Shown one piece after another: positions 3,231-62,230 of a stretch of DNA of 64,000 bases. This stretch comes from Orbicella franksi. Taxonomy: Eukaryota. Under the pieces are notes generated by a model. That model searched no databases. It saw only the letters and a program-made list of their open reading frames with translations, and was not told the DNA's origin. The stretch covers positions 6,324,001-6,388,000 of the forward strand of contig OZ116708.1 of NCBI GenBank assembly GCA_964199315.1, given 5' to 3'. How positions within the stretch are numbered: the first letter of the stretch is position 1; each line of letters opens with the position of its first letter. Position numbers and translations under genes: made by a program.

Positions 3231-3270
3231 GAATTTGACAATTTAGAGCGGTACATTAAGAGATTATTTT

Positions 3271-18215: not shown

Positions 18216-18496
18216 CTATGCTTCTGACTGACTGCCAATGGGACCACTAAAATTAAGTCCTTCGTATACATTATCAGGTCCTCCATTTACATTATCTAGT
18301 GCTTGATAATGATCTCCGGGTTCAAAATTTTGGTTCGGAACACTGGGCTGCTGTAATTGCTCAATTTCCACATATTCGGGCTCGTTGCCCTGGATGCTGT
18401 TTGTTTGCCCATATGCCTGGTTGTCAAATCCCATATTCCCCTCCGTGCCGTAGTTGTCTGATCGACGATGGTGGGTCGATCGTCTGCTACCACTGC

Positions 18497-18527
<31 letters not shown>

Positions 18528-18743
18528 TAATAGTAATAAATAACAATAATAGTAATAAATAACAATAATAGTAATAAATATTAATAATAATACAATGAAC
18601 TTTATTGAGTATTTCTTCACACAAACTTGAATCTTACATATATCTGGTAAAATTTTAGAAATTCTGTTGTTCTGTAAGTTTTTCCCTAAAATATTTTCTC
18701 TAAAAATTTCAATAGCCTTCCCACATGGTTATAATAAATAATA

Positions 18744-18786
<43 letters not shown>

Positions 18787-21700
18787 CACATACATTGATC
18801 TCTGGCGAGTAAAAAACAACAACAACAATTGTTGAATTTTCGCATAGTGGATAATTGCTAACGACGAAAACCTGATGTGAATTAGTAATTACATTTGCTA
18901 ATCAATCACAATATTCCATAGACCCCTTTCTAAAGAACATAAAAAATACGTCCGTTTAAAGCCCTGTAGGGAAACAACTCCGGATCCGTTTGACTATAGT
19001 TCCATGAACTCTTTGATGTCATTCCTACGTCCAAAAGTGTGCTGACCAGAAAATGCGCTAAATGTGCTAAAAAAAAAAAACTTACAGACGGCGTTTCCGC
19101 AGACAGAAGATGGCGACAAAGATTACTGCAATAACCAGGACAGATGCCAAAGCTATGACTGGATAAAGAATCATCGCAGGAATGCCTTGTTTTTCAGTCC
19201 CGGATGGGCTGGGAATTTCTAGGAAAATGCAAAAACCTACATTATCAGCAAATTCAAAACCGGTATATATATTCCAGGTTGATTAAAATTGGAAGACCAT
19301 ACAAGGTTGATGGAATACTTTGTGGCAAAAAAAAAAAAAAAGAAAAGAAAGAAACATGCTTTTTTGAAATATAACTTAAATATTGATTAAAAGCGTTGGA
19401 CTGTTATTGGAAAACCGAAGAATCAAGCAAACAGACAAACAAACCAACAACCAGACCACCAAGAAAAAAACAACCGACAAAAGAATCAACAAAGCAACCA
19501 AACCAATAAACAGATAAGTAGACAAACAAACAAAACAAACAATTTCAACTTACCTTGACAGTCTTTGCTCCATTTTGATCCCGTTTGTCCAAAGGTCGAT
19601 GTCCCGGAAGGACACGAAACACATTCACTTTGGGCCTCTTGGTCCTGGTATTTGTCATTTGCGCATGCCTGGCAACCACTAGAGTTGAAGAAGTATCCAA
19701 GTGGGCAATTGACTAATACAAAGAAAAAAGAAATAAAAAGCAAAAGTTAGTAAGTTAAGTTCAAGTCCTTGATGTAATTCAAGCCAAGGGTAGATATGCA
19801 ATTTAGGCCATTAGTACATTCCCTCTGGCACAATCCCATACAGCTTGTGTTTATATATGGGAGTATCCCTCCCCGGGATGCGAGCTACGTTATGTAAAAA
19901 GCCAAAAACGTCTTTCATATGAACTTAACAAAAACCCGGTGTGCTGCCATTGTTGGCTTCGAGATTTTGTCTGTGCTACAATATCTAATACTTTTGTTCG
20001 TCTCTTGATCAAGAACAGTATATCATAACATGTTCAAATGAAAACAGTCAAGTGTTATGCTTGCTTATATTCAGGTCTTACCACATTTTGTCCCTTTAAG
20101 AATTTGCCCTTTGTCACAAACAAAACCAACTATGCGTACTACCGGGGGTCTTGTTTCGTCATATTCCAAAACAACTCCACTAACGTTCAGAGTTAAGTCT
20201 GTTTCGTTCAGGGACGCTAAGATGTCACTTGATATCTGTTGAGTTGTTTGGTTTAGATCATCCACGGAGGCATTGCTTGGCAGTGGGACTTTTACAGCGA
20301 ATCTCACAGTAAGAGGAACTTTAGAAGCCTGTTCGCTATCGGCTATGTCCCTTCTGCGAAGAGTTCCACTCTGTTCTCCGCATTCTACTTCGACGTTTTC
20401 AATCGTGCATTCTACATCCCCATCACAACCTCCGATAGTTCCCAAGTACAGTGTATAGAGCGCGATGAAGTTTCTGGCGATCCTGGCATGCATTCCTTCT
20501 GTGCACTGGTCAGCTAAATAATGAAGTTCTGAAGCAAGCCAAGCCTTTGCTTGGCGTGTTTCTAGACAGATAAATCAGAAATAAATATTTGGTTAATACC
20601 TGATAAGCAGACAAACTAATATTAACTTACAGCTGAAAAACATGGCTTGGAAAGCTCGTTCATATAGTCTAAAATGTGAATATATATTGGGTATGCCACT
20701 GAAGAGAAACATTCACGAGTGTCAAGATCTGAGCAATCATTAACAAAGACGATTATCTGCAGGGCAACTTTTAGCTTTGTTTTTGTTGGTTATGAGAAAA
20801 TTCATGTCAGAGTTTTGCATGAGGTTACCTGACAAATTATTTTCTCGGGGCAGTTAAGATTTTGATGGTTCATTCGTGAAAAGACGTCGATAGACTGAAA
20901 GCTTTTTTCCCAGTTTACCTCCCTGTGCCATTCTGTCCTAGCTGCTCGAATATAATTAAACGTTCAATTTAGATTACTCTGTTATTTATTATTATTATTA
21001 TTATTATTATTTTATTTTTTTTTTCATTTTTAGAACCTACATCGCATCATCTATGAAATAGATTGCTTTTCTCAACCTTCTAACGGGATAATGCACTAGC
21101 TGACCATTAGCAAACTTCACCCTTTAATGGGCCTTTAGATAACGCACTCAGATTCTCTTACAGCGTGGCCTGAAAAAGATTTTAACGATCTTCCTTGTTT
21201 AATGGATCATATTTCTACAGATACCATGAAAATACCCTAGCAAACAGTCGCATTTCGATATTTGGTCTTACTAGAGCAGTCTGGCACTGCGTCACCCGGA
21301 AGCCATTTCCCTCCAGCAACGCATGCATAGAACGTTGGTGGCTGGTTGGCAAAGTCATATCCCACATTGCAGTGTAGTGTGCAAATCTTCCCGCTGTTTA
21401 GCCACTGGTCACAGGCTTTCGCTCCATTTTGCGGTGTTGGTAAATCATCACATGGTTTAGCTTTTCATAGGGAAAAAAAGAAAACTTTCCTTCATCATAA
21501 GATTCTAAAGGCTTGTTAGAGCTACCTTTTTACCTCACGATTAATTAATTTCAAATTGTTTCAAGCCACACAAATCGTCTAGGTATTAAGTGATTTGACT
21601 TCATTCCAATAACCCATCAGGTACTTCTTCCGTGTTTGGATGGGCACTGCGGATCTAGGACTATTTGCATTTGTTGGCACTGCATGGAATGATATTCAAT

Positions 21701-24700
21701 GTGTCTGAATTTCCAAGTACGAAATGGGTAGTGCTCAGCGCAGTGGCCTATACAGCCACTGCCTTAGGGCCTGTTCTTATGTCGAGCCCGGGTGACAGGG
21801 CTCACCTGGTTACCGAGTGTGGAAGCTTACGAGAAGTATTGTGATTGATGTGAACAGTTCCTTGAAGTTCACGGGTGTTAAAATGGTCGTGTTATGCCTT
21901 CGAGTCCCAAATCGTTTTAGAAAGCCTCCAAACGGCCGTACATACCTACAATAACGACTTGAAAATGGCACTTGGCAGTATTTCCTGCTTTATCTGATGC
22001 AGAATAAGTCACGTTATGTTCTCCCCATGTGAAGTCGCTTCCATTTTTTCTGCTTGTTGTAAGTAAGTGAACGCCGACATTATCTGTGACAGTGACTCCA
22101 GGAAAAAAGATCTTGGTCCATTTCTCTTTAGACGTCTCGTGGATGTCATCAGGGCATTTTGCAATCTTAGGGGGCTCTAGATCTGTCAGGTACCGGTTTT
22201 TTTTTTTTAATTAAAATATATATATATAAAAAAAAAAACAAATAAATAAAAATATAAAGCAGTTTTTCTCCACGCTTCATACAAAATTGACATTTTAACT
22301 GGATCATTTATTTACCAAACTCAAAATTTGCCATCTTTCATAATCTATCACACTCATGATGCTCATTCTAGCAGTATGCAGTAACATGTGAAGCTATTAA
22401 ATATGGCCCAGATGGGATACATGCAATCGTGAGTTTCTACGCAGGTCAGTAAATAGAGCACCAAACTGGTATTTAAGAGGTCACATTACCAAATTGACGT
22501 CAGTTTTTCATGCGTCTGTCCTCTTATTGGTCATGAATTTCGTCATAATATTGTCAAAGTAGCTGTGGTTCCGTAGACTACTTTGACGATGTTAGGATGA
22601 AATTCATTGCCAGTAACAGGACAGACGCATGAAAAACTGACGTCAATGTGTACCTTTGACATGAATAAAAAAGACACAGCTTCTACTCAGACCAGATGAG
22701 TCGGTGACTTTGTATGTAATGTGCGTTTTACCAACATCCAGCTTTTGCGGTGGTCGCAAACCATTGAGAGTCAGGGTCTCGTTAGAGTTGTCGGTGGGGA
22801 CTGGTACCTGCCACTTTACGCTTGCATATGATTGGCCAGGCCCTGTGGGAATATTGTCCATATCAGGTGGACATGTAATGCTGGGAGCCTGGATATCTGT
22901 CGAGGAAACAAATTGCTTGAAATAAATACTGAATTAAGAAATGATAATACGAGAGGAAAACGGACGAGTTGATGGGATAGAATTTAACATTGTGCATGAA
23001 CCTGTTTTGTTTGAAGTATCTCGGCTATCCCGACACCTATCCCATTAAAAATTCAGCAAGTTAAAACAAAAATCATAACCGTGATGGAGGTTTGGACACC
23101 CGTCTTAATTAGCATACATTTTAAGGACTTTACCTCTCCGTTTACGCCTCAGCTTTTGTTTCGATTGAGAAAATTTATCAAACACTCAAGACACTGTTTC
23201 ATCGGCTATCCCAATACCTCGAACTTCATCAAAAATACTTCGCTGCGCGTCGTATTTTTAACTGTTCTCTCGGTGTTTGGATATCCCGATGAAACACTGT
23301 CTCTTGTGTTTGATATGCTCATGGCGAAATAAAGTAACGTTTGCATGCATTAAGTTTTCTGCAGTATTTCCCCGGTTCCCTCAGTCGTGTTCTTTGCTCC
23401 ATAAAATTAAACCAGGAAAAATAATTTCGTTTTCTTGAGTTTTATAAACACCGAGAAACAACAATAATATGTACCCTGTCGATCGCACTTTCACTTATCT
23501 CATTCTAGTAGTTCTATACATACGCAACACATGTTACCTCTGCAGATGGTCTTTGTGGTATCATCACTCCAAGATCCACTCTCAAGGCAGGATACTTTCG
23601 ACGCGCCCTCAAGTTGATAACCGACCGTAACATTGCACATGAAAAAGCACTCAGATTTATAAAGGACACCAGAGGGTATCCGGCAAGTACTTGGAAAAAC
23701 CGTTCCGTGAGATGGGGCTACAATGCTTGGGCACTTGACGACTGATTGAAGAGGATAAAAGAAAACAAACACCTTAAAGAATCGTTGAAATTAAACAGCT
23801 GGATAGGACGCAAGGCCATTGTTTTTGTTGGGGGTGGGAGTGGAGGGTGGGGAAATGTACATTTCATATAGTAAGCAAAAATCTCCAGTTAACAACAAAA
23901 CACTTAAAAACTTAGCAATCGTGGTTATCCCATTACAGGTTTATTAAGCTGTGCAAATTGACAAAACTAAACTGACTCATGATATTAACGGTTCACATTG
24001 AAAAATACGACTTGTTAAAACAATTGTTGCGCATAGGTTACTTACTGTTGCATGTTGTCACGTTGCCTGACCATGTTCCATCTGTTCTACATGAGCGCAA
24101 AGGCGATCCAGCCATTCGGTATCCTGTGTTACAAGCAAGGGAGGCCTGGGAACCAAATGCGGATCCGCATGAAAGAGAGGTTATGGATCCATGAATTGGT
24201 GGCTGGAGTATTTGGCATGATTTTCCTAAAGAATGAAACAGATTTTTCTTTAATGAAATGTTTAGCTTAGAAAAAGACATCGTGTTAGATTTATAATTAA
24301 TAAAATCTTAAATCGTGCTATTTGTCTAAATCTTTAGTGCCCTGGTGTATGTGCATGTGCTCAGCGCTAGTTCGTCTTTTCAACAAACTTAGTTACTGCT
24401 TCCCTGCTTTTGAATAAAGCACCTTCATGCAGTAGCAATAGCCCTTTTCACGGTTAATTGTTGTCATTTGCATTACAATGTAATCCAACGTGGATGCGAG
24501 GCAATTTCGGGCTAAAACTACAAAATAGCCCGAAATTGCCTCAGATACATGCTAGATTTTATTGTAATGCAAATGAGCAAAGGTAACCGTGAAAAGGGCT
24601 GTTTGCTATATAAATTATGATAATTATGAATATTCTTAGTCATCATGATAATTATTGTTAACATTTATTACCATTTATTTCTGTTACCTTATACAAGTGT

Positions 24701-27700
24701 GGTGACCTACTTGCAACTTGCACAATGAAAGTGCAGTTAGCTCGGTTTCCACTGCTGTCTATTGCGGAATACAGTACATTGTACAGACCGATACTGAGGT
24801 TGACAGGAGGACGACTGGCAGGGTAGCTGATAGACACGTGACCAGAGTTGTCAGTCGCCCTTGGCTCAGTCCAGGTGAGTGAAGCACTAGACAAACACTC
24901 CGTGGCATAGAACACCATATTGCCGGGACATGTGTCATTGAAGGAAGGTGGAGTGTTATCTGTATTAAAAACATTGTCAAATGTCTCCAATGGAACTACA
25001 CATTCAAATTAATTTAGTTGATGAACGGAACCAAATTGAGCAAGGATTTTGAGTGAGGGATAACAGCATTAATTAATGGAAATGTATTATATATCAAATT
25101 TGATCTTTTGTGACAGGATATCGAGATCAAAAATGCCAATGTGGCAAAATTTTGAATTTTGTATTAACTGATATTTATTTTCTTTACCACGTTTTTTGTA
25201 CTTTTTTTTTATGTCGCGATAATGAAGAAATCTAATATTAGACCTTCGGGCATACAACTTACATATTTAAAATACGATGTATCAGCCGAGTCTTTTGTTA
25301 CAATGCAAAAGAACACCTTCAGTTGGAAGGAAACTGATATTAAACAGTGAACCAAAAGGAATCAATGATGGCTCGAAGAATCCACGATTTAAACAAATAC
25401 GAACAAGGAAATTGGTGAACACTTTTTCTAACTTTTGAAATCAGTAAAACAAAGCGTTCGACACACTCAGTACGTTATCGTTGCTTTTTCCACTTTAATA
25501 TCACGGGTGGCAAGTTTCCCCTTAATCTTGGCGCTAAATTTCAGTGTTGACTTATAATTTCACATGTGAAAGTACAGAATTGACATGGCAGCGTTTGGTG
25601 TGACATTTCTCGATACAATAAACAAGTCAAAACATATATATTTTTTTGATGGATTAATTAATTAATTAATTAATTAATTAGTTTAAAATATTTAATTAAT
25701 TGATTAAAATTCTAACTTCACCCGTCAACATTTGGCTACGCATACTAGTGATCAGTTTTGGCTTTTTTTCATTTCAAGTGGTCTCTAGGCCTAGCCCCAA
25801 CAAGTATGCTGGTTGACATGTAATCGAAGCTAGGAGCGCGAAAACTCGGCGCAAACGGATTTTGAAGGACTTCCGTGATGGTAGCCGAAGTAATAAATGG
25901 TAGTCAACGGTTGTGAAATAGACTCTCGTCTGCCGCAACCATTTCAAAGAATGAAATGACCAGTAAATTTTCGAAGAAAAGAGAAACCATTCCCAAATTT
26001 AGTTAAGCCACATAATCATACCTCTACAATTTGTATTGTTCGACCCAGTCCACTGCCCGTCATTACCACATACTCGCACAGATGTCCCTTCAAGGACATA
26101 TCCTGGTCTTTGACAAGTGAAAATGCATGTCTGGCCATACGGACTGCTCAACAGACACGATGATGGAGATACACGTACAACATCATCGGTTGGAGGGACG
26201 AGTGGACCACACGTGATTACTAGACATAATGAAAGTTGACGGATAAATATCAGTTAATATGCAATGCAACGCTTTCTCGTGGTCTACCATGGAATTAATA
26301 TCCCACTTGCCACTTAGCTTACATTTTCTTGATATACACTCGCTTTTATTTTATACCATGTCTTAGAAATTACAGTGGCTAACACCATCAATGCGAAAAA
26401 CGTGCAACCCACGATGGAAAGGTCGGGTGCAATATCGTCTTGTATACAATGGCTTTGCTGTATTCTGATTGGCTGTATTTTCTAAAGCAAGGTAAAACTT
26501 ATTTTATACAGCTGGACTCTCCTAATTCGAACTTGATAATTTAGAAGCTCCCCGCTTTTTCGAACTCAAAACCACTTTGCTTGGAGTTTCCCTTGTTTGC
26601 TTCTCGGTCATTTACTGTCGGGTATTTGTAAGTAATTTCGAACCTCCGTTATTTTGAAACAATTTCCTTTTTCCGTCTGAAATTTAATTTCGTTGCTCTT
26701 TAGTTTCTGATGTAAATAGTTTTCATCTGTTACCTTGACAGTAAGAAGTTTCTCCACTCCAAGTCCCGTTCACCAGACATCGCCTTACTGAAGAACCGAT
26801 CATATTGTAGCCAACATTGCATGAAAAGCTGCAGTGTGTATCATAAGGTTCCCATGCGACATTAGTACAGCCGGTCTTAACTCCATTTGTTGGAGTAGAA
26901 AGAGGAGGACATCTTATAACTGTAGAGATATGAGTGAAAAAAAAAAAAATGACTGCAAGGCTTCGAAAAAATAATTTTGTTATTAGCATACCAGTAAAAA
27001 TTTGGCAGAAACGATTGCAGAGACTCTAGTACTTAGCGTAGCCTTGTGGCTAGGACGCTGGATTTAAAATCAGATATGGTCCTGGGTCAAGACTCTTCTC
27101 ACTTCCGTTAGATATCAATAGAGGAGTTGTGGTCATTGATGAATTGAACTCATTCATGTTTCGTAAAAACATGTAACCAACTGGTCGGCCTCCAACCAGT
27201 AGGGATATTTAACAAGGCTTCAGTTCTATCTATAATATGTGTTTCTTGATCTAAAGTATCTCCAATCAGTACAACAGAGCTTAACACACGACACATATTG
27301 GGTCTTTCTAGTATGATTAAAAGCATTAAAGGGGAACTAACTAGAAGCTAGCTTGTGTTTATTCTTTCGCACCTTGACAGTTAGGTAAAGGATTGTCCCA
27401 ATATCCTGGAGGTTTATTGCCAGGGGCAACACACGTGACCGTTGACGAGCCATTCAGATGATAACCAGTCGTGCAAGAAAAGTTGCACTGTCCTCCAAAA
27501 TGATTACCGCAGCTGCTCAGCCTTAGTGCACCTCCTGAATCGACTGTCAGTGACGTACAATTGATAACTGATAACATTAAAAACAATAAAGCTGGTTAGT
27601 ATATCGTATGATAAACACCTTGTTGTGACAACCATCAAGAAATAACTTTTTATACCTATTACTTTAATAGTGAAGATACAAGTAGCCCTGTTTCCTGATT

Positions 27701-28455
27701 GGTCCACTGCAGTGTATGTGATCACGTGGGTTCCCTGACTGAATCGTTGAGGTGGTTTGTAATTTGACGACAGTGACGGCGCGGCCCCTGAGTTGTCAGT
27801 AGCATTCGGTCTGTTCCAGTTTACTTGGGCTGAAAACATACCACGCTCTGCAAACACTAGCAATGGGCTCGTTGGACACGTGACACCGAATGTTGGAGGA
27901 AGAACGTCTACAAAAAGAACGAGTGTTGCATTAGACCTTTTCTTTCAACAACAGAAAAAGAAGTCAGTTGATGAAGTGTTAGTGTGCCACCATTTGGATA
28001 AAAATATATAGCAGTAATTTCATGGGGTACTGTTTATTGTGATGTGCATGGACCCAACTTTTAATCTGTGTGTGAAAGCTTAGAGTTCGTTTCTTTGGCA
28101 AAATCCAAGATTTAGCTTTAAAATATTACGACACAACCTTTCTTAACAACATTTAAGACATTTTTTAAACTGTTCAAAAAATACACGACGTTTGTTTTCG
28201 AACGTCATCACCAAGTAAAAAAAAAAAAAAAAAACAGTATGAATATTCTATAAATACAAGAAAAACAATAGTTAATTAAAAACAAAAGTAACATAAAAAT
28301 ATGCTACAAGCTAAACAAAGAGTTTAGCCATTTTTTGCATGGGATTCTTAAATCCAGAAACGGATTTTTCGTTTCTTTACTTAAAAGCCTAATCCAAGAT
28401 CACTCGGTTCATGGATCATAAAAGTAGCCGAAGAAACCTAGCCCAGAGTGGATCC

Positions 28456-28499
<44 letters not shown>

Positions 28500-40698: not shown

Positions 40699-40724
40699 GG
40701 TTACCGGAAATAGTCTAGTCCCTG

Positions 40725-52200: not shown

Positions 52201-55200
52201 AGTGGCCNNNNNNNNNNNNNNNNNNNNNNNNNNNNNNNNNNNNNNNNNNNNNNNNNNNNNNNNNNNNNNNNNNNNNNNNNNNNNNNNNNNNNNNNNNNNN
52301 NNNNNNNNNNNNNNNNNNNNNNNNNNNNNNNNNNNNNNNNNNNNNNNNNNNNNNNATGAGTGACTGATCATGAGTGACTGATCATGAGTGACTGATCATG
52401 AGTGACTGATCATGAGTGACTGATCATGAGTGACTGATCATGAGTGACTAATCATGAGAGACTGAGTGACTGAGTGACTGAGTGACTGAGTGACTGAATG
52501 CCTTGCTATATCTATATGCGTCAATAGCTGCAAGTCAGGTAACATGCAATTAAATCCAATATTGTTTTTTTTCTGTTTAAAGACAATGAATCGCCTTCAT
52601 TTGGCGAAACCTGTCCATCTGCACAAAGTGTTTTCGCGGATGAAGGAAAATCTTCAGCCACAGTGAGCTGGGGACCAGTTACAGCTACAGATAACGATCA
52701 AGCTAGCGTTACTGTGTCCCCTAAAGTGACGTCACCACACGTTTTTTCTGAGGGAAGCCATACCGTGGTCTACACTGCTACAGATCCGTCGGGAAACACG
52801 AAACTCTGTTACTTTCGAATTACTGTTCAAGGTAAGAATGTCTTGGCGTATATGAAAACAACAACAACAACAACAATTAATCAACCAATCAAGGCATGTA
52901 TGCTAATAATCTAATTGTGGGAAAATGGCTCTCGTTCCTTTGAATTTATTTAAATAAATGAACGGTTTTTTCATGTGAAACATATAGTTGAAAAAAAAAA
53001 CGTTAAAAAGAAGAGTTAGCATTATATAATTGAGAACAGAAAAATAATACTGTCTATCAAAAGGTATATCTTAAAATGAAGGCCATTTTACACAGCGTGG
53101 CTCCTTCAGGTTTATCAATAATGGGACCTGGATCTAAAAAAAATAAGGAATTAAACTTCAAAAGCAAAGTATAATGCTAAAGAAATGATTGTTGTGAAGA
53201 GATCAAGTGAACGCGCGGAGAAACAATTCAGTTTTTCGTTGAATGAAATAGTCTTCTCGGAGGTGTTAGCATTCTTTGTAGAAACTACCTTTGTTACATT
53301 CTATCCGTCAGTATCAACAAATTTGATTAGGAATAAGTCGTTGTTATTTAATAACTTCTCAAACCCAATGCCCCAGGACGGTTAATTCACCTAATCATAT
53401 TTCATTTTAGCTCTTCGATGTTCTGTACTGTTCGCACCTGCAAACGGCAGACTGGAGAATGCGGCCTGTGGAAATGTCTATGGAAGCTTATGCCGACTGA
53501 CCTGCTACAAGGGGTATGAATTGAAAGGATCTGTTGAGAGAAAGTGCGACAAGATAGCAGGGACAAATGTGGCCCAATGGACAGGAAATACAACATCCTG
53601 TGAAGGTAAGTATGGGCATGTTTTGTCCATTCCTTCATAATGTGTGGTAAACTAAGAAACATTCTTGACAAGATGGCTTGCATAGAACCATACTTTCTTT
53701 GAACATGCCAAAGAAGCTCTAGTTGAATTTTTTTTTTCCTATTGTTTTGCAAAAAAAAAAAAACAAAACAAAACAAAACAAAAAACAAAAAAAACAACAA
53801 CAACAAAAAAAGCAGATTTGAAGGAGTCTTGCTCCCCCCTGGATGAGATGCTAGTCTATCGCAGCTTTCTCCTCGGCATTCAGACAGGAATTTGCCCCGT
53901 CGTGGTTTCTCTCCATCAGTACCTCTAGTGCTTTCGAACTAATCGTTTGCTATTTGTCTTAGCTATCCACTGTCCATCTCTAAACACTCCCGATCACGCT
54001 ATTCAGTCCGGGTACGGCTGCGGTGGTCCGAGCTCTAGCTACAGCACATCCTGCTATTTCAGTTGCATGTTGGGATACGAGGCTGTAGGAGGATCACAGA
54101 AAAGAACTTGTCTGGAAACTGGACAGTGGAGTGGAACCGAACTTCAGTGCCAAGGTAAGGAAATGATATCCACGTTTATGGGAAACGGGATTGCTGTTTG
54201 TCGTCGATGTAGATTAAGAAAAAAAAAAACTCTAAACGCAGGTAAATACAGTTTCGAAAGGAGAAAAACAACGTGTTTTTTAACCTGTGTGAAGTAAATG
54301 ACCTCCTCCCTATCTTTAATCTTCTGGGCCGTTTTTTTCAAAACCCCGGTTGACACAAACTCAGAGTTAAAAATTAACTTAAGTATTATTTTTTTCTTGT
54401 ATGTTTTTTACTTCCTTTGTTTTGTTTAGTTTGAGATTACCCCATCTCAAAACTAAAGGCCAAACGATATAAGAAGAAAACTTCACCGAAATGTTGCAAA
54501 ACCATTGACATCAAAATTTAGGTCAATCCTGGGTTAGCTTAATTGGGCTTTGAACATCTCCGAACACAAGGTTAAGGCCCTAGTGTTTTCTCGTAAGGCA
54601 ACTCTACTGGGCAGAATTACCTATCAAGACCTATTCACAAATTTTATTTTAGTTTTTTTTTTTTTTTTTAATAAAAATGACTTTAGATTTCTTGTCTCGT
54701 TATAAATTGTCACCAGGCTTAAAGCTTAGGTTGCGCCAAATGACGTAAGAAATGATCCATCAATAATGTTGTGTTGCCTTGCAGCGATCACCTGTCCTTC
54801 AATCACTATTACGTCGAAAGGACTGGACATCACCCCCTCATTCTGCACCAATGCAAGCGCTGTCATTCATTACGCAACAGATTGCCGGTTCACCTGCAGG
54901 AGCGGATATCAACACCATGGGCCTGGGCTTAAGACTTGTAACCAGCAGAAGACCTGGTCTCCATTAGGGAATCCATGGTGCAAGGGTGAGTTGGTAACTT
55001 TACGAAACTCAGCTTACGACATGGTAACACCTACTGTGAATCGTCATGTTTCAAATATAGATTTTTACCAAGCTAATTATGAAGCCTTTAATATTAGAGA
55101 AGTGCAGTAGGACAAGTAGCGCTTAAATGAAATGTGGTTTAAATTGAAAACAGAGCAGATTAAAGAAAAATAACATTGTAGATGTTGTCGTTGTTGTTCT

Positions 55201-58200
55201 TAACGATAGTAACGATGATGGTAAGGGGGAATATGAGGAAGATGATGAGGAAAAGTAGTAGTAGCAGGAGCAGCAGGAGGAGCAGGAGAAATATCAAAGA
55301 GAGGGAGGTGGGGAGAATGTGATGATAAGTCTTTTGCTGCTGTCTATGATGCTGTTTGGCTTTGTTAGTCTCTTCGTATAACAGTCGAGGTTCAACAATG
55401 ACTTGTGTATAGTTTCGTCTTCTTGTTGTAAAGGATATATTCTTTTCGTTTATAGATGTCTCGGCACCAGTATTTTCAAACTGCCCATCAAATATTGTAG
55501 CCACCGCTGACAGAGGTACAACGTCGACACAGGTCACTTGGTCTCATCCTTCAGCTACAGACAACTCCGGCCTCATTCCCAACATAACACGCTATGGGAA
55601 ACTACCTGGGGACTTATTTCATGCTGGAGAACACAACATCCGGTACGTGGCTTTAGACAAAACAGGGAACGTTGCCGAATGCAAATTTAAAGTCTTCGTT
55701 TCAGGTAATTTGCATATGTCCCGCGCGGGAATATTTGTTTGCAGCATTTGCCTCATCAGAATAAGCGCTTGTGATCGAGCTATGAAAAATATCAGCTCTG
55801 ATTGAAAGAACATGCATGGATAAAAGATTTTTCCCCTTCTACTATGCATGGAGCATGACATTATGTTTGCGTAGAGTTAAAAAAGTCAAAATTTTACAAC
55901 GATTATTTAGGCGCATTAAGGGCTTTTGGCACTAACATATCTCGAAGGTTTTTTCGTTTTTTTCTCTTTTTTTTAATCATTTTAGTATATACCTGATAAG
56001 TGAATAGTACCTATCACATGTTCGATCTGATTGGTTAACTCGGGGTTGACTAAAATTTTCCGACCATTTGTCGGTTTGTTGTTAGAACTAAGACACTTTT
56101 TTGGTCCATTAGTTACCTCATAGCCTGTCTCTTTCCGTAAGGGCGGCTGTGATCATGAACAGGCTAGTTACCTCAGTGTCCGTGAAAGTGGTTGCGCACT
56201 ATTCACCTCCGCTTCAGTGAATAAGTGTTATTTAGTATGAGCGCACTCAGTGATCTTAGTGTTTCAAGCAATCTGATTGGTTCGCTATCTCGGGCTAATG
56301 AGTATTATTCACTTCCTAAAGAATACCTGTTAAATATGCCATGCAAAGCACGAAATCGATTCAATGTTCATCGTTCGTCACCCTCGTTTGCTAACATCCT
56401 TTAATATGCGTCCATGCACTCGGACGAAATCACAATTTTGTACTATTGTTACCTTTTTAAGTGGTCCGCTGCCTGCCAAAGTTGTATTCCCCAGCTGGAG
56501 GTTCCTTACAGTGTACCAAAGACAATCAGTACGGATCTGAGTGCTCCTTGGCTTGTCAGGATGGCCACACCATGAGTGGCTCTGACCGCAGAGTCTGCGA
56601 GAAAGATCCAGTTACGTCCGTGGGTGTCTGGACGGGAAATGAGACGAAATGTGAACGTATGTAAAAAAAAAAAAACAACAATATTTAAGTTCATGTCAGA
56701 TTCCCCACCCCCCCCCCCCCCATACCTAGAAAAAGAAACAACAACAACGACAACGAAACTAACAAACAAACAAACATACTTAAGGTATTCAATTTTCAGA
56801 TTTACCTTATTTGCTCTTCTTACAGCCTCCGCCTGAAATCAATAGACCTTCAAAGCAGTAATGAAACATTTCCACGCAAGTTAATCTTTGCCTATTTGTA
56901 TTTCTTTTACCAAGCAACTTTCATTCCTAGTAAGCTGGAAGTAAAAATCGCCTTTAATTTGATGGCAGGGAAAAGGAAAGCACCATGAAAATGGTTAATA
57001 GCCTTTTGCAATCTTACTGGAAACTTCTGCACAAGTGGTTCATATTTTCTGAATACCTTTATAGACAGAATTTTGACTGTATAAAAAAAGAAAAGTGCTT
57101 CGTCGATGTTTAAAAGTCGATCTTTCTAGCTCGTAAGTCCACCAAGGGCACAAAGTAATAAGTCACGTTAATTTATCTTTCCTTAGTGGTGAAGTGTGCT
57201 AGACTCTTCCCCCCTCCTCACAGCATACAGTCTGGCTGCGGAGGCGGTTCCTTGTTCAACGTTTTTGGTGACAAATGCCTTTTATACTGCTCCCGTGGCT
57301 ACCACCGGGTTAACGGCTCGACTGAGAGGGTCTGTCTAGCAAATGGCACCTGGTCTGGTGAAGAGCCGTACTGTCAAGGTAAGGGAAGCAGCAAGAAAGA
57401 GGAATAGTTGCGACAAGCCTTTACAGAACACATTTACGCCGATACGCAGGAGGCGAAACTTTATTGATGCTATAAAATCGGTATTCTAAGTCTGAAAGTG
57501 TGGTTAGGATTAGCACGCAACCCTTTCTTTTTTGTTCAGTCTTAGCAGCTAGGTATAGAGGAGAAAAGAGAGATGAGAAGAGAGATATATGTGTGAACTA
57601 TTTCAGGGTCGATTTGTTAAAAGTTTATAGTTTCAGAGAAGTAAACAAATAACTTTTTGTCCGCAAGCGTTTGATCAGGAATTCTCATGTCAGCAAAAAA
57701 TTCCTAAAATATTTACTGAATAAGATTTTACTTGTTTTATTTTTTTGGTACAGTTGTCCGCTGTAAGGTTCTTCTGCCTCCAACGGATGGTCAGGTGACA
57801 CCACACTCCTGCACGACTTCTCCTGAATACGATACTACATGCCACTTTTCTTGTCCCAAAGGCTACAGGCTGCATGGAGAACCAATAGCGACATGCCTTA
57901 GCGACGGTCAGTGGTCGAAAAACACCACTTCTCTTTGCAAAGGTTGGTTTATCTTCCAAGAAGTTAATTTTTTCTTTGTCTTTGTATTACGGCCTGGTGT
58001 GGGGCAGAAAAAAAGACCTTGCAGTTGTTTTATTCCGAGAGCTTTTGGGAGGCAGCATGGCCGATTGGTCTAGGGCGTCGGATTTGAAATCTGAAGGTCC
58101 CTGGTTCAATCCTCACCTTACCGTTATCTGGATTTGCTATTGATAGTCTCGAGTTCAAGCGCTTGACCGACTTTCGTAAATAGCTAACTGGTCAGCCTCC

Positions 58201-61200
58201 CACCAGTTGAGATTATTCATTATTTATGTTCTATTTGCAAGCTGTGTTTGTTTGTTTGCGGAGTCCTCAATTAGCACAACAGTGTTAAATACATTTTAGA
58301 ATTAAATAAAATTAATCATCGATTGATTGATTTGTTTATTTATTTATTTATTTATTTTTATTTAGTTATTTTAAAACCGACCGAGTGTTCTTCATCTGTG
58401 ATATTGCTCGTTCAAGCTGTTGACTTCGTTAATTATTCTACTGTTAATTGATATATTTAAATACTTGCAGACGTGGAAAGACCCTCCTTTGGCGTTACTT
58501 GCCCCAGTGATATCAAACGTTACGCAGACAGGGCTAACAATTATACCACAGTAAACTGGGCACCAGTGGTTGCCACTGATAACTCTGGCGTGGTAACGAG
58601 TGTGACCAAATATGGTGTGCCTACCGTAAATAGATTCTACCAAGGACGACACCGGGTCACTTACAACGCCAGCGACGCAGCAGGGAATTACAAAGTCTGC
58701 ACGTTTTTCGTGACAGTCGAGGGTAAGCCATTTGCGAACGGCACTGAAAGTGCAGATTAGACATCCTGTAAAGCAATGGCAATTGCGTATTGTTAACAAA
58801 CCTCAGCATCAAATACGAAAGGCCTTTTTAAGACAGTCTCTATAGACATAGCTGACAACTCAACAGTTGTTTAAATTGAGCGCTAATTTGCAGGCCCTGC
58901 CTCTTGTAACTTGAAAAAAAAAAGATAACTGTTTTTGGCAACGTTCATTTGCAACAAATTGGTCACATAATGGTTTGAATGCATTTTTCTCTGAAAAAAA
59001 AAAACGTGTGGTTACAATTTAATATTACGTGTCAAAATTGTGCGACATATGGACATTTAATGAGTATTGATTATTTTTATTATTGTGATTATTTTATGCG
59101 CTTTCTAAGTTAGCCAGTGAATACAAAATTGATGACCGTTGCTGAATAATCGTTCTAACATGTCATATTTTCCGTTCGTCTATAGTTTTACGATGCCAAA
59201 CGTTGTTTCCTCCACTGAACGGCTTTGTAGAGGGAGAATGTGATAACACCTACGGCTCCACATGTAAAATGACGTGCAACGATGGGTACAACTTGCTCGG
59301 GTCTGACATTCTTACCTGCCTTAAGAAACCGGGCCATATTACAGGATACTGGGACGAACCAGTACCAGTCTGTAAAAGTAAGTGGCAAATATGTTTGTTA
59401 ACCATCATGTCACGCTGCTAGTATGCACACCCATTTGGCTTTGTATTCATTTTGAGAAAGAAAAGTTATTCAAGTTTATCAGTTATATAGGCCCTGGTCA
59501 ATAACGGTGCACGATAGTTGACGATATTTGATAGCATCCTAACTATTATCGACTATCATAACGTGGTGAAACGGGAAAAAAAAAAAACTATCATTGACTA
59601 TCAAGAAGAGTCTGAACAAGCTCAACGTAAATGATAGTTGATGATAGTCGGAGGTAGGGTGCGGGAGTAAGTAGTCAAACGAAAGCGCGCGGTACAGCTA
59701 TCATCAACTATCATCGTCTTCATTACCAGTGCTTGAAAATTCAGAGTATTCCTAGTTTCTTACTATCTGAGGACGTTTCTATATATTGCAAATACTGATT
59801 TTATTCTTGGGGAAAAAGCCTCCTTAATGTGTCTATATAGAGTCTAAATATAAGGCTGCAAAAGATCTTTAAAGGGTCAAATAGTAGCGTATACTAGGCG
59901 TTTTAGGCTTAACACTTCTCCGGTATGTGAAAAGACTTGGTTCCATCTATATCATAACGTGTATATCATTAAGCTCTATAAGTCTATAACATTAACCTAT
60001 TCATATAGTTTTCGTGTACATTGTTGTAATTAGAATAGAACCACTAACATGGCTATTGTTAAAAACTAAAGACACGACACGGCTATTTACATTTAGCTAT
60101 TTTCTCTATTGATTTTTTTTTTTTTTCAGTACGGTCATGTTCTTCCCTAAATGCACCTCGGTATGGTTTTATTTATCCGCACATGTGTACGTCTTTCCCA
60201 GTCAGCGGAACCATCTGCTATTTCGAATGCAGACATGGTTTCCTTGGAAACGGTGGAACTACTGAGATTCTTTGTGGGAATGATGGAAAGTGGAGCAAAA
60301 ATGAATCGTCAATTTTGCAATGCCTTGGTAAGGGCTTTGGAAAACACATGCCCCAAGATATGTTGTATATGCCATATAACTTAAAGTATTAATCGGGATA
60401 CGATGTATAATTATCATTCTTAAATATCGTTTGTAACTGCAACTAGGTGGAGATTCATCGTATCATCTCGCCCAGGTGTAAATACATTTAGATTTTGTAA
60501 CGTGTCTCTTCGGCCTCAGTAAGCTTCGTTAGAATGGTAACAACCGCCAACATGGCCAGATACACAAACAGCTTCAAGTTGTTTACAACGACAGTCTTCT
60601 CTAAAAACTAGATCATCTCAACCATTGAAATTCGGTCCAGCTCTAGACATCCTGTAGACACATATAAGTATAGTATCTATAGAAAAGAACTAGCAATGAC
60701 TGTAACAGTCTTCCATCTGATTACTTATCGGACGACTCCTCCACAAAATTTGAGGCCTCTATCTCTGAACACGTTTATTTGTTGTAATTGTTTGAGCTTT
60801 CCCTATTTATTTTTGTGTTTATATTTTGTCTTGTTTAATCTTGCACTCACGTCACTATAATTGACTTTGCAAGAATCAAATGTAAATATAATTGTTTGGT
60901 TCGCTAGTACTTATTCGATTCTTGTGCAGTGTGATTATACGTATTTTGTTGTAAATGTGAAGTAGTATTATTTTAGTTATACCTGTATGGCTGTGTGGGA
61001 AGTCTATAAGAATACGTTTATCATCAGCAATACTTTATGACACTTTCCATTGGTGAAATGACCATTTATATCTAATCAAATATCTTTTTTTTCTTTGAAA
61101 TTTTGTGCAATTTCGTATGTCCATAAGAACTAGTAAAAGTTCATTGTATTATCCAGAAGCACGAATGAATGAGTGGCTTGACGTAAAAAAAAAAAAAAAA

Positions 61201-62230
61201 AAGTGTCGCTCTCCCAAATTTTCAGGAGTATTTCTAGAGAAAAACTCCACGGGTCGAAAATGTTCCCCCATTTATTTAAAGACAGAAATGCGGCGTTTAG
61301 CCCATCAGAGTGCATGCATTTCAACACGCGAAGATAACGCGTTAAGTGTTTAGGAAGAGCTTACGGCTCTTTGGATTTCGTTTCCCATAATATGCCTTAT
61401 GTTGGTATATTCGTATAGATGTTACTGCACCAGTGTTCATGAGGTGTCCTTCAGATATTCGTGCAAACATCAATGCAAATTCTACAGCATTGGTTAACTG
61501 GACCCTACCCGTCGCGCTGGACAACAGCAATCTAGCTCCACAATTGACGGTATTTCCACCAGGGATTAGCCCCCCACAGATCTTTAACGGAACTGCTTTA
61601 GTTGTGTACACTGCTAGGGATGCAAGTGGGAACAAGAAAGAGTGCTCGTTTAGAATTATATTAGAAGGTCAGTCTTAATTAGATGTTATTAAGTGTATCG
61701 TGGATTATGTCAAATTGAGTATCCAGCCCCTGTTCAATCTTGCGAAATTACGTGGTGTCATCGTGTCCTCCTCTCTGTCTTGATAACAGGGTCTGAAATT
61801 TTAGTGCTGCAATATACTGTGTCCTCTGCCACCCACCATGCCTCGGTCCACAAGAGAAGACTCACCACCCTTTCTCCTTCTCCACGGTCATTGAGTGATT
61901 TGACATTGACAAATTTTGGCAGGTAGGACGACCTCAATCCAATAGCATATATTGACACAAGTCCTTCATTTATTTTCGTCGCAGACAATTTAGGTCCCCA
62001 GGTGGTATATTGTCCCCCAGACCAAAACATCACCGCTACGAAGACGAGAACAAGAGTAACGTGGAATGACCCTCAGTTTAAAGACAACAGCAACAGTCCA
62101 TTGGTGATAACATGCAGTCATCAAAGTGGAACTGAGTTCTACTGGGGGACCTGGAATATACATTGTACAGCCTATGATAATAATCCCAACAACAAGCCTG
62201 CTGTTTGCCAGTTTTCACTAACAGTTAAAC
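43234..62230 (+). CDS. Secreted or membrane protein, 5' part (about 1180 aa in window): SP-TSP1-CaEGF-CCP2-HYR-CCP3-HYR-CCP3-HYR-CCP2-HYR2..., continuing past the window (SVEP1/polydom-like stalk)
   Basis: 17 GT-AG exons, all with phase-1 junctions: 43234-43321 (MDSFTKFLILVLAFSVSQYGVDACGGCGP), 50125-50397, 50828-51025, 51516-51698, 52583-52831, 53411-53605, 53963-54154, 54785-54985, 55456-55704, 56462-56656, 57187-57378, 57754-57942, 58471-58722, 59186-59377, 60130-60327, 61419-61667, 61985-62230. No stop codon is seen. Linking exon 1 across the 6.8-kb intron is an inference from phase and the signal peptide. Confidence 0.9.
44884..48518. mobile_element. Long-inverted-repeat (foldback-like) element in intron 1, arms about 800 bp, spacer about 2 kb
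   Basis: 44945-45500 is nearly identical to the reverse complement of 47890-48452, and homology fades outward and inward. TTAA lies at both presumed outer ends (44884, 48515). No transposase is recognisable. Confidence 0.85.
46645..46752. repeat. Small hairpin element nested in the spacer of the long inverted repeat
   Basis: TAGTCCAGTTCTGGCCCT pairs with AGGGCCAGAACAGGACTA (17/18); CTTGCTTCT occurs on both flanks. Confidence 0.7.
51805..52500. repeat. Tandem array of 8-mer variants (GACTAAGC, GGCTGAGC, GGCTGAGT, GACTGAGT) and a 14-mer (ATGAGTGACTGATC), with two N gaps (51864-52011, 52208-52355)
   Basis: Seen directly in the sequence. Confidence 0.95.
54326..54560. mobile_element. Degenerate MITE
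   Basis: GGGCCGTTTTTTCAAAACCCCGGTT left end; ATCCTGGGTTAGCTTAATTGGGCTTTGAACA right end. Resembles a common coral MITE from memory. Confidence 0.5.
58047..58300 (+). mobile_element. tRNA-derived SINE
   Basis: A box TGGCCGATTGG, B box GGTTCAATCC (58103-58112), followed by a non-tRNA body and an AT-rich tail. Confidence 0.8.
59490..59720. mobile_element. MITE-like repeat with GATAGTTGA/TCAACTATC inverted motifs
   Basis: Multiple GATAGTTGA(C/T)GATA and CTATCATCAACTATC motifs in opposite orientations. Confidence 0.5.

What the first reader, a model, noticed from the sequence alone, without database searches (positions are those of the whole stretch)
18216..62230. Head-to-head paralogous pair: same stalk, swapped heads
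The start codons are 2.5 kb apart and divergent. Minus gene: [YWTD-EGF]3 + CCP3-HYR-CCP3-HYR-CCP2-HYR2. Plus gene: TSP1-EGF-CCP2-HYR + CCP3-HYR-CCP3-HYR-CCP2-HYR2. In both, the last HYR carries the F-x-WG-x-x-N signature (FTWGEHN / FYWGTWN), and [14 protein letters not shown] resembles PGHITGYWDEPVP. This looks like an inverted duplication followed by head exchange, giving a co-regulated receptor pair (receptor/co-receptor, receptor/decoy, or paired recognition system). It predicts that the plus gene continues with CCP, the membrane-proximal domain and GCC2/3. The architecture is seen; the function is inference.
Basis: partly seen in the sequence, partly recalled or inferred. Interest (0 to 1): 0.82.

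Follow-up and report, generated by a model that had tools for sequence, protein, structure and literature searches.

The report
Divergent pair of coral mosaic receptors
Two giant coral cell-surface proteins of the SVEP1/Polydom-like kind, one with an LDL-receptor-type head and one with a thrombospondin-type head, are read in opposite directions from one short shared promoter; the two-gene unit is old, recurs in a 2-Mb gene cluster and is kept in another coral, but it is not a recent mirror-image duplication.

Summary
Both genes are real, intact apart from one assembly gap, and built as described. The start codons, 40698 (-) and 43234 (+), lie 2,536 bp apart.

RNA reads add a non-coding leader exon to the minus gene, ending at 43017. 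The two promoters are therefore about 100-200 bp apart.

The predicted continuation of the plus gene (CCP, membrane-proximal domain, GCC2/3) is present. The gene then continues as an SVEP1-like protein: three GCC domains, about 22 EGF domains, pentraxin, a second CCP-SEA-GCC module, a membrane span and a tail. The unnamed membrane-proximal domain has a SEA fold with a conserved polybasic loop.

The two stalks share 27-46% identity and are not colinear domain by domain, except HYR4-CCP9-SEA-GCC. The minus gene's nearest relatives (57-95%) are tandem genes on its own strand. A sea-anemone gene already has its architecture.

The head-to-head pairing of propeller-type and thrombospondin-type genes does recur at least eight times on this chromosome. 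It is also syntenic in another coral assembly.

Function as a receptor pair is untested. In the one informative RNA sample the minus gene was far more abundant. The scan noted neighbouring family members separately (s1-234109, s1-249497).

The parts
43017..43100 (-). Minus gene (M) non-coding leader exon. The 3' end at 43017 is exact; the 5' end (transcription start) is not mapped and lies at 43049 or beyond.
   Evidence: RNA joint 41010|43017 with GT..AG on the minus strand, 5 reads. Donor GTGAGT. Block 42986-43159 is 81% identical in L028 of another coral, with the donor kept.
43101..43233 (.). Shared promoter / 5'UTR interval between M's leader exon and P's start codon.
   Evidence: Inferred. 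A conserved ~45-bp block at 43117-43159 is also present in L028.
40620..41010 (-). M exon 1: 5'UTR, ATG at 40698, signal peptide ([19 protein letters not shown]...).
   Evidence: RNA depth 8-11 and joints at both ends. Sequence. Homologous exon in L028 and upstream of paralogues A and C.
38738..39131 (-). M exon 2, YWTD propeller 1, first half.
   Evidence: Joint 39131|40620 in 26 reads; the loose end at 38738 reads into exon 3. Pfam Ldl_recept_b.
37038..37435 (-). M exon 3, YWTD propeller 1, second half.
   Evidence: Acceptor fixed by the RNA loose end. Pfam Ldl_recept_b 2.8e-18.
36123..36248 (-). M EGF1.
   Evidence: Pfam FXa_inhibition/EGF. Phase-1 splice sites.
34981..35386 (-). M YWTD propeller 2, first half.
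   Evidence: ORF and splice sites. Paralogues 77-93% identical.
34170..34559 (-). M YWTD propeller 2, second half. Its 3' end and donor are lost in the assembly gap.
   Evidence: ORF runs into the N run. Acceptor.
34035..34169 (.). Assembly gap at the exon/intron boundary of M.
   Evidence: Not filled.
33545..33670 (-). M EGF2.
32359..32782 (-). M YWTD propeller 3, first half.
31612..32009 (-). M YWTD propeller 3, second half.
30916..31044 (-). M EGF3.
30246..30419 (-). M CCP1.
   Evidence: Pfam Sushi 3.1e-10. Splice sites.
29659..29844 (-). M CCP2.
29016..29198 (-). M CCP3.
27647..27907 (-). M HYR1.
   Evidence: Pfam HYR 1.4e-20. Splice sites.
27373..27567 (-). M CCP4 (carries [14 protein letters not shown]).
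   Evidence: Groups with P CCP7 in the tree.
26734..26919 (-). M CCP5.
26022..26219 (-). M CCP6.
24711..24959 (-). M HYR2.
24046..24225 (-). M CCP7.
23538..23741 (-). M CCP8.
22654..22896 (-). M HYR3.
   Evidence: Pfam HYR 3.5e-13.
21946..22182 (-). M HYR4 (FTWGEHN).
   Evidence: Pfam HYR 5.4e-18.
21272..21460 (-). M CCP9: divergent membrane-proximal CCP-like domain with no Pfam hit.
   Evidence: Four Cys and the Trp are kept. Forms a clade with P CCP9 (support 96/96).
20082..20561 (-).
   Evidence: AF2 pLDDT 84.6. The top six VIA-align hits are all SEA domains, Z 7.4-9.3. R70 is nearly invariant in 30 homologues.
19554..19712 (-). M GCC2/GCC3 (Ephrin_rec_like) domain.
   Evidence: Pfam 6.1e-08.
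19086..19218 (-). M transmembrane exon.
   Evidence: Hydrophobic span followed by RKRR.
18216..18492 (-). M cytoplasmic tail and stop codon: FDNQAY, YVEI, YQAL-x10-YEGL.
   Evidence: The motifs are kept in paralogues A and B (NPAY in A).
43234..43321 (+). Plus gene (P) exon 1: ATG, signal peptide, ...ACGGCGP; donor GTAAGT, phase 1.
   Evidence: Homologous exon with the same donor in L028. Only about 1 read per run, so splicing to exon 2 is inferred.
44910..48495 (.). 3.6-kb transposon with ~700-bp terminal inverted repeats, in P intron 1.
   Evidence: Dozens of copies at 92-98%, with the ends matching in inverted orientation.
50125..50397 (+). P exon 2: TSP1-like repeat + EGF.
   Evidence: Pfam FXa_inhibition/EGF_CA; TSP_1 is below threshold. 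Phase-1 acceptor.
50828..51025 (+). P CCPa.
   Evidence: Pfam Sushi. Splice sites.
51516..51698 (+). P CCPb.
51864..52355 (.). Two assembly gaps (51864-52011 and 52208-52355) inside the CCPb-HYR0 intron.
   Evidence: The flanking exons are in phase. There is no intervening exon in L029.
52583..52831 (+). P HYR0.
   Evidence: Pfam HYR 2.6e-14.
53411..53605 (+). P CCP1.
53963..54154 (+). P CCP2.
   Evidence: Groups with M CCP3.
54785..54985 (+). P CCP3.
55456..55704 (+). P HYR1.
56462..56656 (+). P CCP4.
57187..57378 (+). P CCP5.
57754..57942 (+). P CCP6.
58471..58722 (+). P HYR2.
59186..59377 (+). P CCP7 (carries PGHITGYWDEPVP).
60130..60327 (+). P CCP8.
61419..61667 (+). P HYR3.
61985..62230 (+). 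P HYR4 (FYWGTWN). It is the last P exon in the window; the gene continues for about 16 kb beyond it (L004, L005).
   Evidence: Pfam HYR 2.8e-11. Continuation.

Best explanation
The window holds two intact genes for very large type-I membrane proteins of the cnidarian SVEP1/Polydom-like kind, whose core is Sushi-HYR-ephrin-receptor-like.

Gene M (minus strand, about 2,200 aa) puts three LDL-receptor-type YWTD-propeller/EGF units on a Sushi/HYR array. Gene P (plus strand, about 3,200 aa) puts a thrombospondin-like repeat plus EGF on a similar array. P then continues as an SVEP1-like protein (3 GCC, about 22 EGF, pentraxin) before its own membrane anchor.

Both end their array with the same module: HYR-HYR-CCP-SEA-GCC. 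The SEA-fold domain carries a conserved polybasic loop. I infer that a furin-type convertase cuts this loop, leaving a non-covalently held, sheddable ectodomain, as in other SEA or SEA-like receptors.

The genes are transcribed divergently from one interval of roughly 100-200 bp, because M has a non-coding leader exon that ends 217 bp from P's ATG.

The pair is an old two-gene unit, not a recent inverted duplication. M and P belong to two lineages that separated before corals and sea anemones split. The unit was later copied along a roughly 2-Mb cluster by tandem and segmental duplication, and several copies have lost one partner.

Shown here: gene structures, the leader exon, the SEA fold, the paralogy map and synteny in another coral. 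Inferred: convertase cleavage, endocytic and tyrosine-motif signalling, and any cooperation between the two products.
For: Architecture.

RNA: the joints 39131|40620 (26 reads) and 41010|43017 (5 reads), both minus-strand GT..AG, define M's exons 1 and 2 and its leader exon. P exon 1 is conserved, with its donor, in L028.

SEA fold: AF2 pLDDT 84.6. MUC16 SEA Z 9.3, Gpr126 SEA 8.8, TMPRSS6 SEA 8.4. Foldseek places Gpr126 at probability 0.99. The polybasic loop is conserved.

Age of the split: M and P domains are 27-46% identical. M versus tandem paralogues A/B/C is 57-95% and colinear. Actinostola (GCA_033675265.1, identified) has a YWTD-EGF + CCP/HYR + SEA + GCC gene whose CCPs join M's by position.

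Recurrence: on C11, minus-strand TSP1-EGF genes are each followed by a plus-strand YWTD gene at 6.45|6.46, 6.52|6.54, 7.02|7.04, 7.12|7.15, 7.38|7.40, 7.47|7.49 and 7.56|7.58 Mb.

Synteny: ENA contig ctg51829 has the M-type and P-type signal-peptide exons 2,451 bp apart and divergent. TSP1-EGF lies on one side and five Ldl_recept_b exons on the other. The whole junction aligns at 74-81%. Its best DNA match to this genome is only 82-87%, which fits another species but does not exclude a paralogous pair.

Family context: an expanded Polydom family with a Sushi-HYR-TKE core and TSR additions is described in Nematostella (PMC12549020).
Against: P exon 1 is barely covered by RNA (about 1 read per run) and its splice to the TSP1 exon is not observed. 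In the same sample M is at least 20-fold higher, so equal co-expression is not seen.

Pairing is not obligatory. M-type genes A and C keep only orphan copies of P's first exon. Two 99-100% copies of P start at window position about 49382, without exon 1 or an M partner. The third type of P-like gene has no partner.

A two-gene segment copied in tandem keeps its arrangement without any selection.

The species of ctg51829 is unknown.
Confidence: 0.65

Rival explanations
1. A local inverted duplication of one gene created the pair, the heads were then exchanged, and the two products work together as receptor and co-receptor, receptor and decoy, or a paired recognition system under common control.
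For: The domain order of the arrays is the same. The terminal module HYR4-CCP9-SEA-GCC is shared, with reciprocal best hits. All domain exons are phase 1-1, which makes exon shuffling easy. The promoter interval is shared. The pair recurs and is syntenic. The tails carry different tyrosine motifs: ITAM-like YxxL-x10-YxxL in M, and SLYQEL / TIYGKI (ITIM/ITSM-like) in P.
Against: The stalks are not colinear. The best domain permutation is not the diagonal, and the tree joins M3 with P2 and M4 with P7.

M's closest relatives are same-strand tandem genes. M-type architecture already exists in a sea anemone.

Expression in the one informative sample is very unequal. Tails differ between paralogues, and short tyrosine motifs arise easily by chance. 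No binding test was run.
Confidence: 0.15
2. Incidental neighbours. The region is a fast-evolving tandem cluster shaped by unequal crossing-over. The head-to-head arrangement and shared promoter are passively inherited by-products of copying a two-gene segment, with no functional coupling between M and P.
For: Many broken or unpaired copies exist: orphan P first exons beside A and C, P copies without exon 1 or partner, and unpaired M-type arrays at 6.15-6.31 and 7.8-8.3 Mb. Expression is unequal. Such NAHR-driven clusters, with transposons hitch-hiking, are described in Acropora genomes (PMC12314368). The window's introns are full of young transposons.
Against: The junction, including the leader exon, its donor and P exon 1, is conserved at 74-81% in another assembly, with spacing kept at 2,451 versus 2,536 bp. 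Pairs persist between paralogues as diverged as 54-60% aa.
Confidence: 0.3

Closest known systems
SVEP1/Polydom and the expanded cnidarian Polydom-like family (Nematostella matrisome, PMC12549020)
   Same: The core is Sushi-HYR-ephrin-receptor-like (TKE/GCC2-3). P also has the EGF array and pentraxin in SVEP1 order. TSR-bearing short Polydom-like forms are described in Nematostella.
   Different: No vWFA domain was seen. Both proteins here are membrane-anchored, with a SEA-fold domain and cytoplasmic tyrosine motifs. A YWTD-propeller head (M) is not among the additions listed in the passages of that paper that I read. The head-to-head gene arrangement is not mentioned in those passages either.
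LDL-receptor / LRP family (YWTD propeller + EGF modules, NPxY tails)
   Same: M has three Ldl_recept_b propeller/EGF units. Its tail motif is FDNQAY; paralogue A has NPAY.
   Different: There are no LDL-A ligand-binding repeats: RNA shows the signal-peptide exon spliced directly to the first propeller. The rest of the ectodomain is Sushi/HYR/SEA/GCC. The NPxY motif is degenerate in M itself.
Type IV collagen gene pairs COL4A1/A2, A3/A4, A5/A6 (established knowledge, not tested here)
   Same: Paralogous extracellular-matrix genes sit head-to-head on a short bidirectional promoter, and the pair has been duplicated as a unit.
   Different: The collagen partners co-assemble into one molecule. No association of M and P is shown, and many copies here have lost a partner.
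SEA-domain receptors cleaved in the juxtamembrane region (MUC16, TMPRSS6, Gpr126/ADGRG6 SEA with its furin site)
   Same: Same fold: Z 8.4-9.3, rmsd 2.5-3.1 over 106-114 residues. The polybasic site lies in the loop between the second and third strands.
   Different: There is no Pfam SEA match and no GSVVV autoproteolysis motif. Cleavage is untested.
Botryllus fester / uncle fester (sushi-domain activating/inhibitory allorecognition receptors; PMC11507803 abstract)
   Same: Clustered, duplicated membrane receptors with sushi domains. Opposing signalling motifs are possible.
   Different: No homology beyond the sushi fold was tested. No polymorphism or allorecognition evidence exists here. This is an analogy only.

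Membership tests
SVEP1/Polydom-like (cnidarian sense: core Sushi-HYR-TKE) | Sushi/CCP repeats | tested here: met
   18 of 21 CCP exons match Pfam Sushi.
SVEP1/Polydom-like (cnidarian sense: core Sushi-HYR-TKE) | HYR domains | tested here: met
   9 of 9 exons match Pfam HYR.
SVEP1/Polydom-like (cnidarian sense: core Sushi-HYR-TKE) | Ephrin-receptor-like (GCC2/GCC3, TKE) domain after the HYR pair | tested here: met
   M: Pfam 6.1e-08. P: Pfam 5.8e-12, with four copies by homology.
Canonical SVEP1/Polydom | EGF array followed by a pentraxin domain | tested here: met
   Met for P only: 12 EGF repeats in one exon, and Pentaxin at 9e-11. M has neither.
Canonical SVEP1/Polydom | N-terminal vWFA domain and a long C-terminal Sushi tail; secreted | tested here: not met
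   No vWFA exon lies between the signal peptide and the TSP1-EGF exon in the ORF maps. P ends with CCP-SEA-GCC-TM-tail.
LDL-receptor family | YWTD beta-propeller + EGF modules | tested here: met
   Ldl_recept_b and FXa_inhibition/EGF. Three units.
LDL-receptor family | LDL-A (class A) ligand-binding repeats | tested here: not met
   The signal-peptide exon splices directly to propeller 1 (joint 39131|40620). No such ORF was seen.
LDL-receptor family | NPxY internalisation motif in the tail | tested here: inconclusive
   M has FDNQAY, paralogue A has DNPAY and B has DDPAY.
Bidirectional (head-to-head) gene pair | Divergent transcription with starts less than 1 kb apart | tested here: met
   M's leader exon ends at 43017 and P's ATG is at 43234. 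The exact transcription starts are not mapped.
Bidirectional (head-to-head) gene pair | Arrangement conserved in other genomes | tested here: met
   ctg51829 of ENA ERZ25878340. Only one other assembly was examined, and its species is unknown.
Bidirectional (head-to-head) gene pair | Correlated expression of the partners | tested here: inconclusive
   One informative run: M depth about 20, P exon 1 at 1 or less. Two runs had no reads at all.
SEA domain | Alpha/beta sandwich fold of SEA | tested here: met
   The top six structural matches are all SEA domains, Z 7.4-9.3. Model pLDDT 84.6.
SEA domain | Proteolytic processing in the loop between strands 2 and 3 | not testable with these tools
   The polybasic run is conserved in homologues. 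There is no GSVVV motif.
ITAM-bearing receptor (M tail) | YxxL/I - x6-8 - YxxL/I | tested here: inconclusive
   YQAL-x10-YEGL is kept in A and B with the same spacing. A spacing of 10 is outside the canonical 6-8.

The most novel reading that the evidence does not exclude
The cluster may encode a fast-duplicating system of paired surface receptors. In this reading a propeller-headed partner with an ITAM-like/endocytic tail and a thrombospondin-headed partner with ITIM/ITSM-like motifs are co-transcribed from one promoter and integrate opposing signals. That would make it a candidate coral self/non-self or symbiont-recognition locus, analogous in logic to Botryllus fester/uncle fester or to plant head-to-head NLR pairs.
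Probability: 0.08. Interest if true: 0.85.

Novelty: new variant of a known kind. Interest (0 to 1): 0.45.

Why it matters
Cnidarians are known to have an unusually expanded SVEP1/Polydom family, described so far as matrix proteins.

This locus shows membrane-anchored, SEA-containing versions with exchangeable heads. They are organised as divergently transcribed two-gene units in a roughly 2-Mb cluster of at least 30 genes.

That gives a concrete, testable case of head exchange by exon shuffling, since all exons are phase 1-1. It also shows a bidirectional gene pair copied as a unit, as in the type IV collagen genes.

If the partners prove to be co-expressed and polymorphic, the cluster would be a candidate recognition locus in corals, where no allorecognition genes are known.

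As it stands it is a well-documented gene-family and genome-organisation finding, not a new mechanism.

Tried and rejected
Those pairs are mapped only from exon hits.

2. A degenerate pattern for P's first-exon end found only the window's own copy. The first exons of the other P-like genes are therefore too diverged, or different.

3. The whole-library search with the SEA exon returned 44 mostly exon-sized fragments and no full-length annotated protein. Full-length architectures in other species had to be read from loci instead.

4. Foldseek against the PDB gave no hit at E <= 0.001. The SEA assignment rests on VIA-align and on AFDB hits.

5. RNA runs kept as contigs hold 40-73% of the words of stretches that are about 75% intron. 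They contain DNA or unspliced RNA and say nothing about expression.

6. Runs X21 and X22 gave no reads at all, so they are no test.

7. The DNA search with the junction found no match at the other pairs. This gives no evidence for or against conserved promoters there.

8. No complex prediction was run, because I do not claim that M and P bind.

9. Literature searches for coral + HYR/sushi/LDL receptor and for allorecognition + coral + sushi found no description of this locus.

Full report
**Setting.** The window is C11:6324001-6388000 of a 497-Mb assembly. RNA and DNA runs that hold the stretch are labelled coral. GC is 38%, and there are three N runs, at 34035-34169, 51864-52011 and 52208-52355.

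**Gene M (minus strand).** Stop-to-stop ORF maps show a chain of exon-sized ORFs from 40698 down to 18216.
- The order is: signal peptide, three units of two YWTD-propeller exons plus one EGF exon, then CCP3-HYR-CCP3-HYR-CCP2-HYR2.
- After the array come a divergent CCP, a 160-aa exon without a Pfam match, one GCC2/GCC3 (Ephrin_rec_like) exon, a transmembrane exon and a 91-aa tail.
- Pfam confirms Ldl_recept_b, EGF/FXa_inhibition, HYR and Ephrin_rec_like.
- Raw RNA reads (runs X24 and X23) give an exact joint 39131|40620 in 26 reads. A loose end at 38738 reads into the next propeller exon. The signal-peptide exon is therefore spliced straight to the first propeller, with no LDL-A repeats.
- With phase-1 sites for all domain exons, the model assembles into 597 aa before the gap and 1,602 aa after it, with only the terminal stop.
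- The gap clips the last few codons and the donor of exon YWTD2b. Continuity there cannot be shown, and I did not fill it.

**Gene P (plus strand).** ATG 43234 opens a classical signal peptide. It ends in ...ACGGCGP with a GTAAGT donor in phase 1.
- The next exon found is 50125-50397 (TSP1-like + EGF). Pfam TSP_1 scores 18.9 bits, below the 21.6 cut-off.
- Then come CCP2-HYR and CCP3-HYR-CCP3-HYR-CCP2-HYR2, up to 62230.
- Both N runs lie in the CCPb-HYR0 intron. A related Tara scaffold has those two exons adjacent.
- P's first intron holds a 3.6-kb transposon with ~700-bp inverted ends.
- It then goes on with two more GCC domains, about 22 EGF repeats, a pentraxin domain, EGF, a second CCP-module-GCC set, a transmembrane segment and a tail. 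P is thus an SVEP1-like protein with a membrane anchor, of roughly 3,200 aa.
- The part up to CCP9 assembles into 1,243 aa without stops.
- RNA support for exon 1 is about one read per run, so its splice to 50125 is inferred. The inference rests on phase, the consensus sites and conservation of the exon and its donor in another assembly.

**The junction.** The RNA reads show a second minus-strand intron, 41011-43016 (joint 41010|43017, 5 reads, GT..AG on the minus strand).
- Coverage is continuous from 41010 down into M's coding exon. M therefore has a non-coding leader exon ending at 43017.
- That is 217 bp from P's ATG, so the two transcription starts must lie within roughly 100-200 bp of each other.

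**The unnamed module is a SEA-fold domain.** An AlphaFold model built on 30 homologues has pLDDT 84.6 and pTM 0.79, with a beta-alpha-beta / loop / beta-alpha-beta-beta-beta layout.
- An exhaustive structural comparison puts six SEA domains at the top: MUC16 Z 9.3 and 8.8, Gpr126/ADGRG6 8.8, TMPRSS6 8.4, then 7.6 and 7.4.
- Foldseek agrees for Gpr126.
- The loop between strands 2 and 3 carries a polybasic run, conserved in the family: an RRRR consensus with one Arg nearly invariant. It reads RRRD in M, A and B, RRKRS in P and KRKRK in P's second module.
- Cleavage by a furin-type convertase is my inference.

**Is it an inverted duplication with swapped heads?** Domain by domain, M and P share 27-46% identity.
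Of the permutations, 2.9% do as well, and the best one is not the diagonal.
- In a maximum-likelihood tree of 43 CCP domains, every M domain pairs with the same position of tandem paralogue A. P domains pair with the same positions of a Tara-scaffold relative.
- In the same tree the Actinostola gene's CCPs join M's CCP4, CCP6, CCP7, CCP2/5 and CCP9.
- The only resolved M-P joins are CCP9 with CCP9 (support 96/96), M CCP3 with P CCP2, and M CCP4 with P CCP7.
- So only the terminal module HYR4-CCP9-SEA-GCC is positionally homologous. The arrays share a pattern but have been remodelled independently.

**M's real relatives.** The SEA exon has 18 copies on C11. None of these hits is P's module.
- The 190 kb to the left of the window hold same-strand M-type genes that are 57-95% identical and colinear with M.
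- These are a complex with three propeller blocks (A), a shorter gene (B) and a head-only unit (C).
- GCA_033675265.1 is the sea anemone Actinostola. It has a YWTD-EGF + CCP/HYR + SEA + GCC gene.
- The M/P split therefore predates the coral-anemone split. Nematostella's published Polydom family already includes TSR-bearing forms with the same Sushi-HYR-TKE core.

**Is the pair a unit?** Exon searches of the whole assembly show P-like genes (TSP1-EGF 56-60%, SEA exon 63-82%) on the minus strand. Each is followed within 11-26 kb by a YWTD-type gene on the plus strand (propeller exon 77-79%, SEA exon 54%).
- These pairs lie at 6.45|6.46, 6.52|6.54, 7.02|7.04, 7.12|7.15, 7.38|7.40, 7.47|7.49 and 7.56|7.58 Mb. 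Several are recent segmental copies of one another.
- P1, tail-to-tail with P, has the same EGF-pentraxin-CCP-SEA-GCC 3' half.
- In another assembly (ENA ERZ25878340, ctg51829) an M-type signal-peptide exon and a P-type one are divergent and 2,451 bp apart. TSP1-EGF lies 7 kb downstream on one side, and five Ldl_recept_b exons lie on the other.
- The whole junction aligns colinearly at 74-81%, including the leader exon and its donor. That contig matches this genome at no more than 82-87% outside a shared transposon.

Pairing is not obligatory, however.
- Upstream of genes A and C the junction was copied together with two or three orphan, partly decayed copies of P's first exon, but no P body.
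- Two 99-100% copies of P (+330 kb and +931 kb) begin at window position about 49382, without exon 1 or an M partner. One of them is 86% identical in the tail, so it is a true paralogue.
- A third P-like type has no partner.

**Function.** Nothing here tests function.
- M's tail keeps FDN(Q/P)AY, PEY(V/M)EI and YQxL-x10-YxxL in paralogues A and B, even though overall tail identity is about 50-60%.
- P's tail has SLYQEL, TIYGKI, two YxN motifs and a C-terminal SQV. That tail occurs only in P's own near copies.
- In the one informative RNA sample, M exon 2 had depth about 20 and P exon 1 had 1 or less. This does not support equal co-expression.
- I therefore read the locus as an old bidirectional two-gene unit of Polydom-like membrane receptors, multiplied by tandem and segmental duplication. 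Cooperation between partners is possible but unproven.

**Earlier notes of the scan.** Other notes describe M itself (s1-229008), its tail (s1-229007), kappaB-like sites in the intergenic region (s1-229051), the A complex (s1-234109) and the first plus-strand partner gene at about 6.459-6.481 Mb (s1-249497). They are consistent with the map above but are not independent evidence.

Noticed in passing
window 44910-48495: A 3.6-kb element with ~700-bp terminal inverted repeats sits in P's first intron. Dozens of copies at 92-98% identity are spread over all chromosomes, so it looks like a young DNA transposon family.
   Followed up: partly
window 63000-64000: This is repeat-family sequence in the intron after P's HYR4 exon. 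About 40 copies at ~80% identity occur genome-wide. Copies at 100% occur only inside the two segmental copies of P.
   Followed up: partly
C11:6703306-6733054 and 7304200-7334598 (outside the window): Two further copies of gene P, 98-100% identical in most exons (one is 86% in the tail). Their homology to the window starts at about 49382, so they lack P's first exon, the promoter and gene M. They may be recent segmental duplicates, and possibly truncated genes.
   Followed up: partly
C11:6209673-6212428 and 6318190-6323030 (L014-L015, L025): Orphan copies of P's signal-peptide exon lie on the plus strand, 2.4-7 kb upstream of M-type genes A and C. There are two or three in tandem; some have a stop or have lost cysteines. 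No P gene body follows them.
   Followed up: partly
window 43123-43133: GGGGATTTCCC, a kappaB-consensus-like 11-mer, lies inside the most conserved block of the shared promoter (42986-43159). The other coral contig has GGGGTTTTTCCC at the same place.
   Followed up: no
window 38772, 38937, 39055, 40665: The RNA reads of one individual show four apparently heterozygous sites in M's first two coding exons. Three are non-synonymous (K>E and F>L in propeller 1, L>F in the signal peptide).
   Followed up: partly
L028:9659-9841: In the other coral contig, a 62-aa stretch 85% identical to M's HYR4 lies on the P-type strand, 180 bp upstream of the TSP1-EGF exon. Nothing comparable is present at that place in the window.
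   Followed up: no
window 151-3242, minus strand: Long ORFs resembling the endonuclease and reverse transcriptase of a LINE-type retroelement. Further transposon-like ORFs lie at 9255-15171, as noted by the scan under s1-228976.
   Followed up: no
L027:10091-19202: In another assembly the SEA exon of an M-type gene is duplicated, with a reverse-transcriptase/GIY-YIG element between the two copies.
   Followed up: no
C11:6146688-6207248 (L008-L014): Gene complex A has three complete YWTD-EGF x3 blocks interleaved with CCP/HYR runs, but only one signal-peptide exon and one SEA-GCC-TM end. It is either one protein of more than 5,000 aa or a nested set of partial duplicates.
   Followed up: partly
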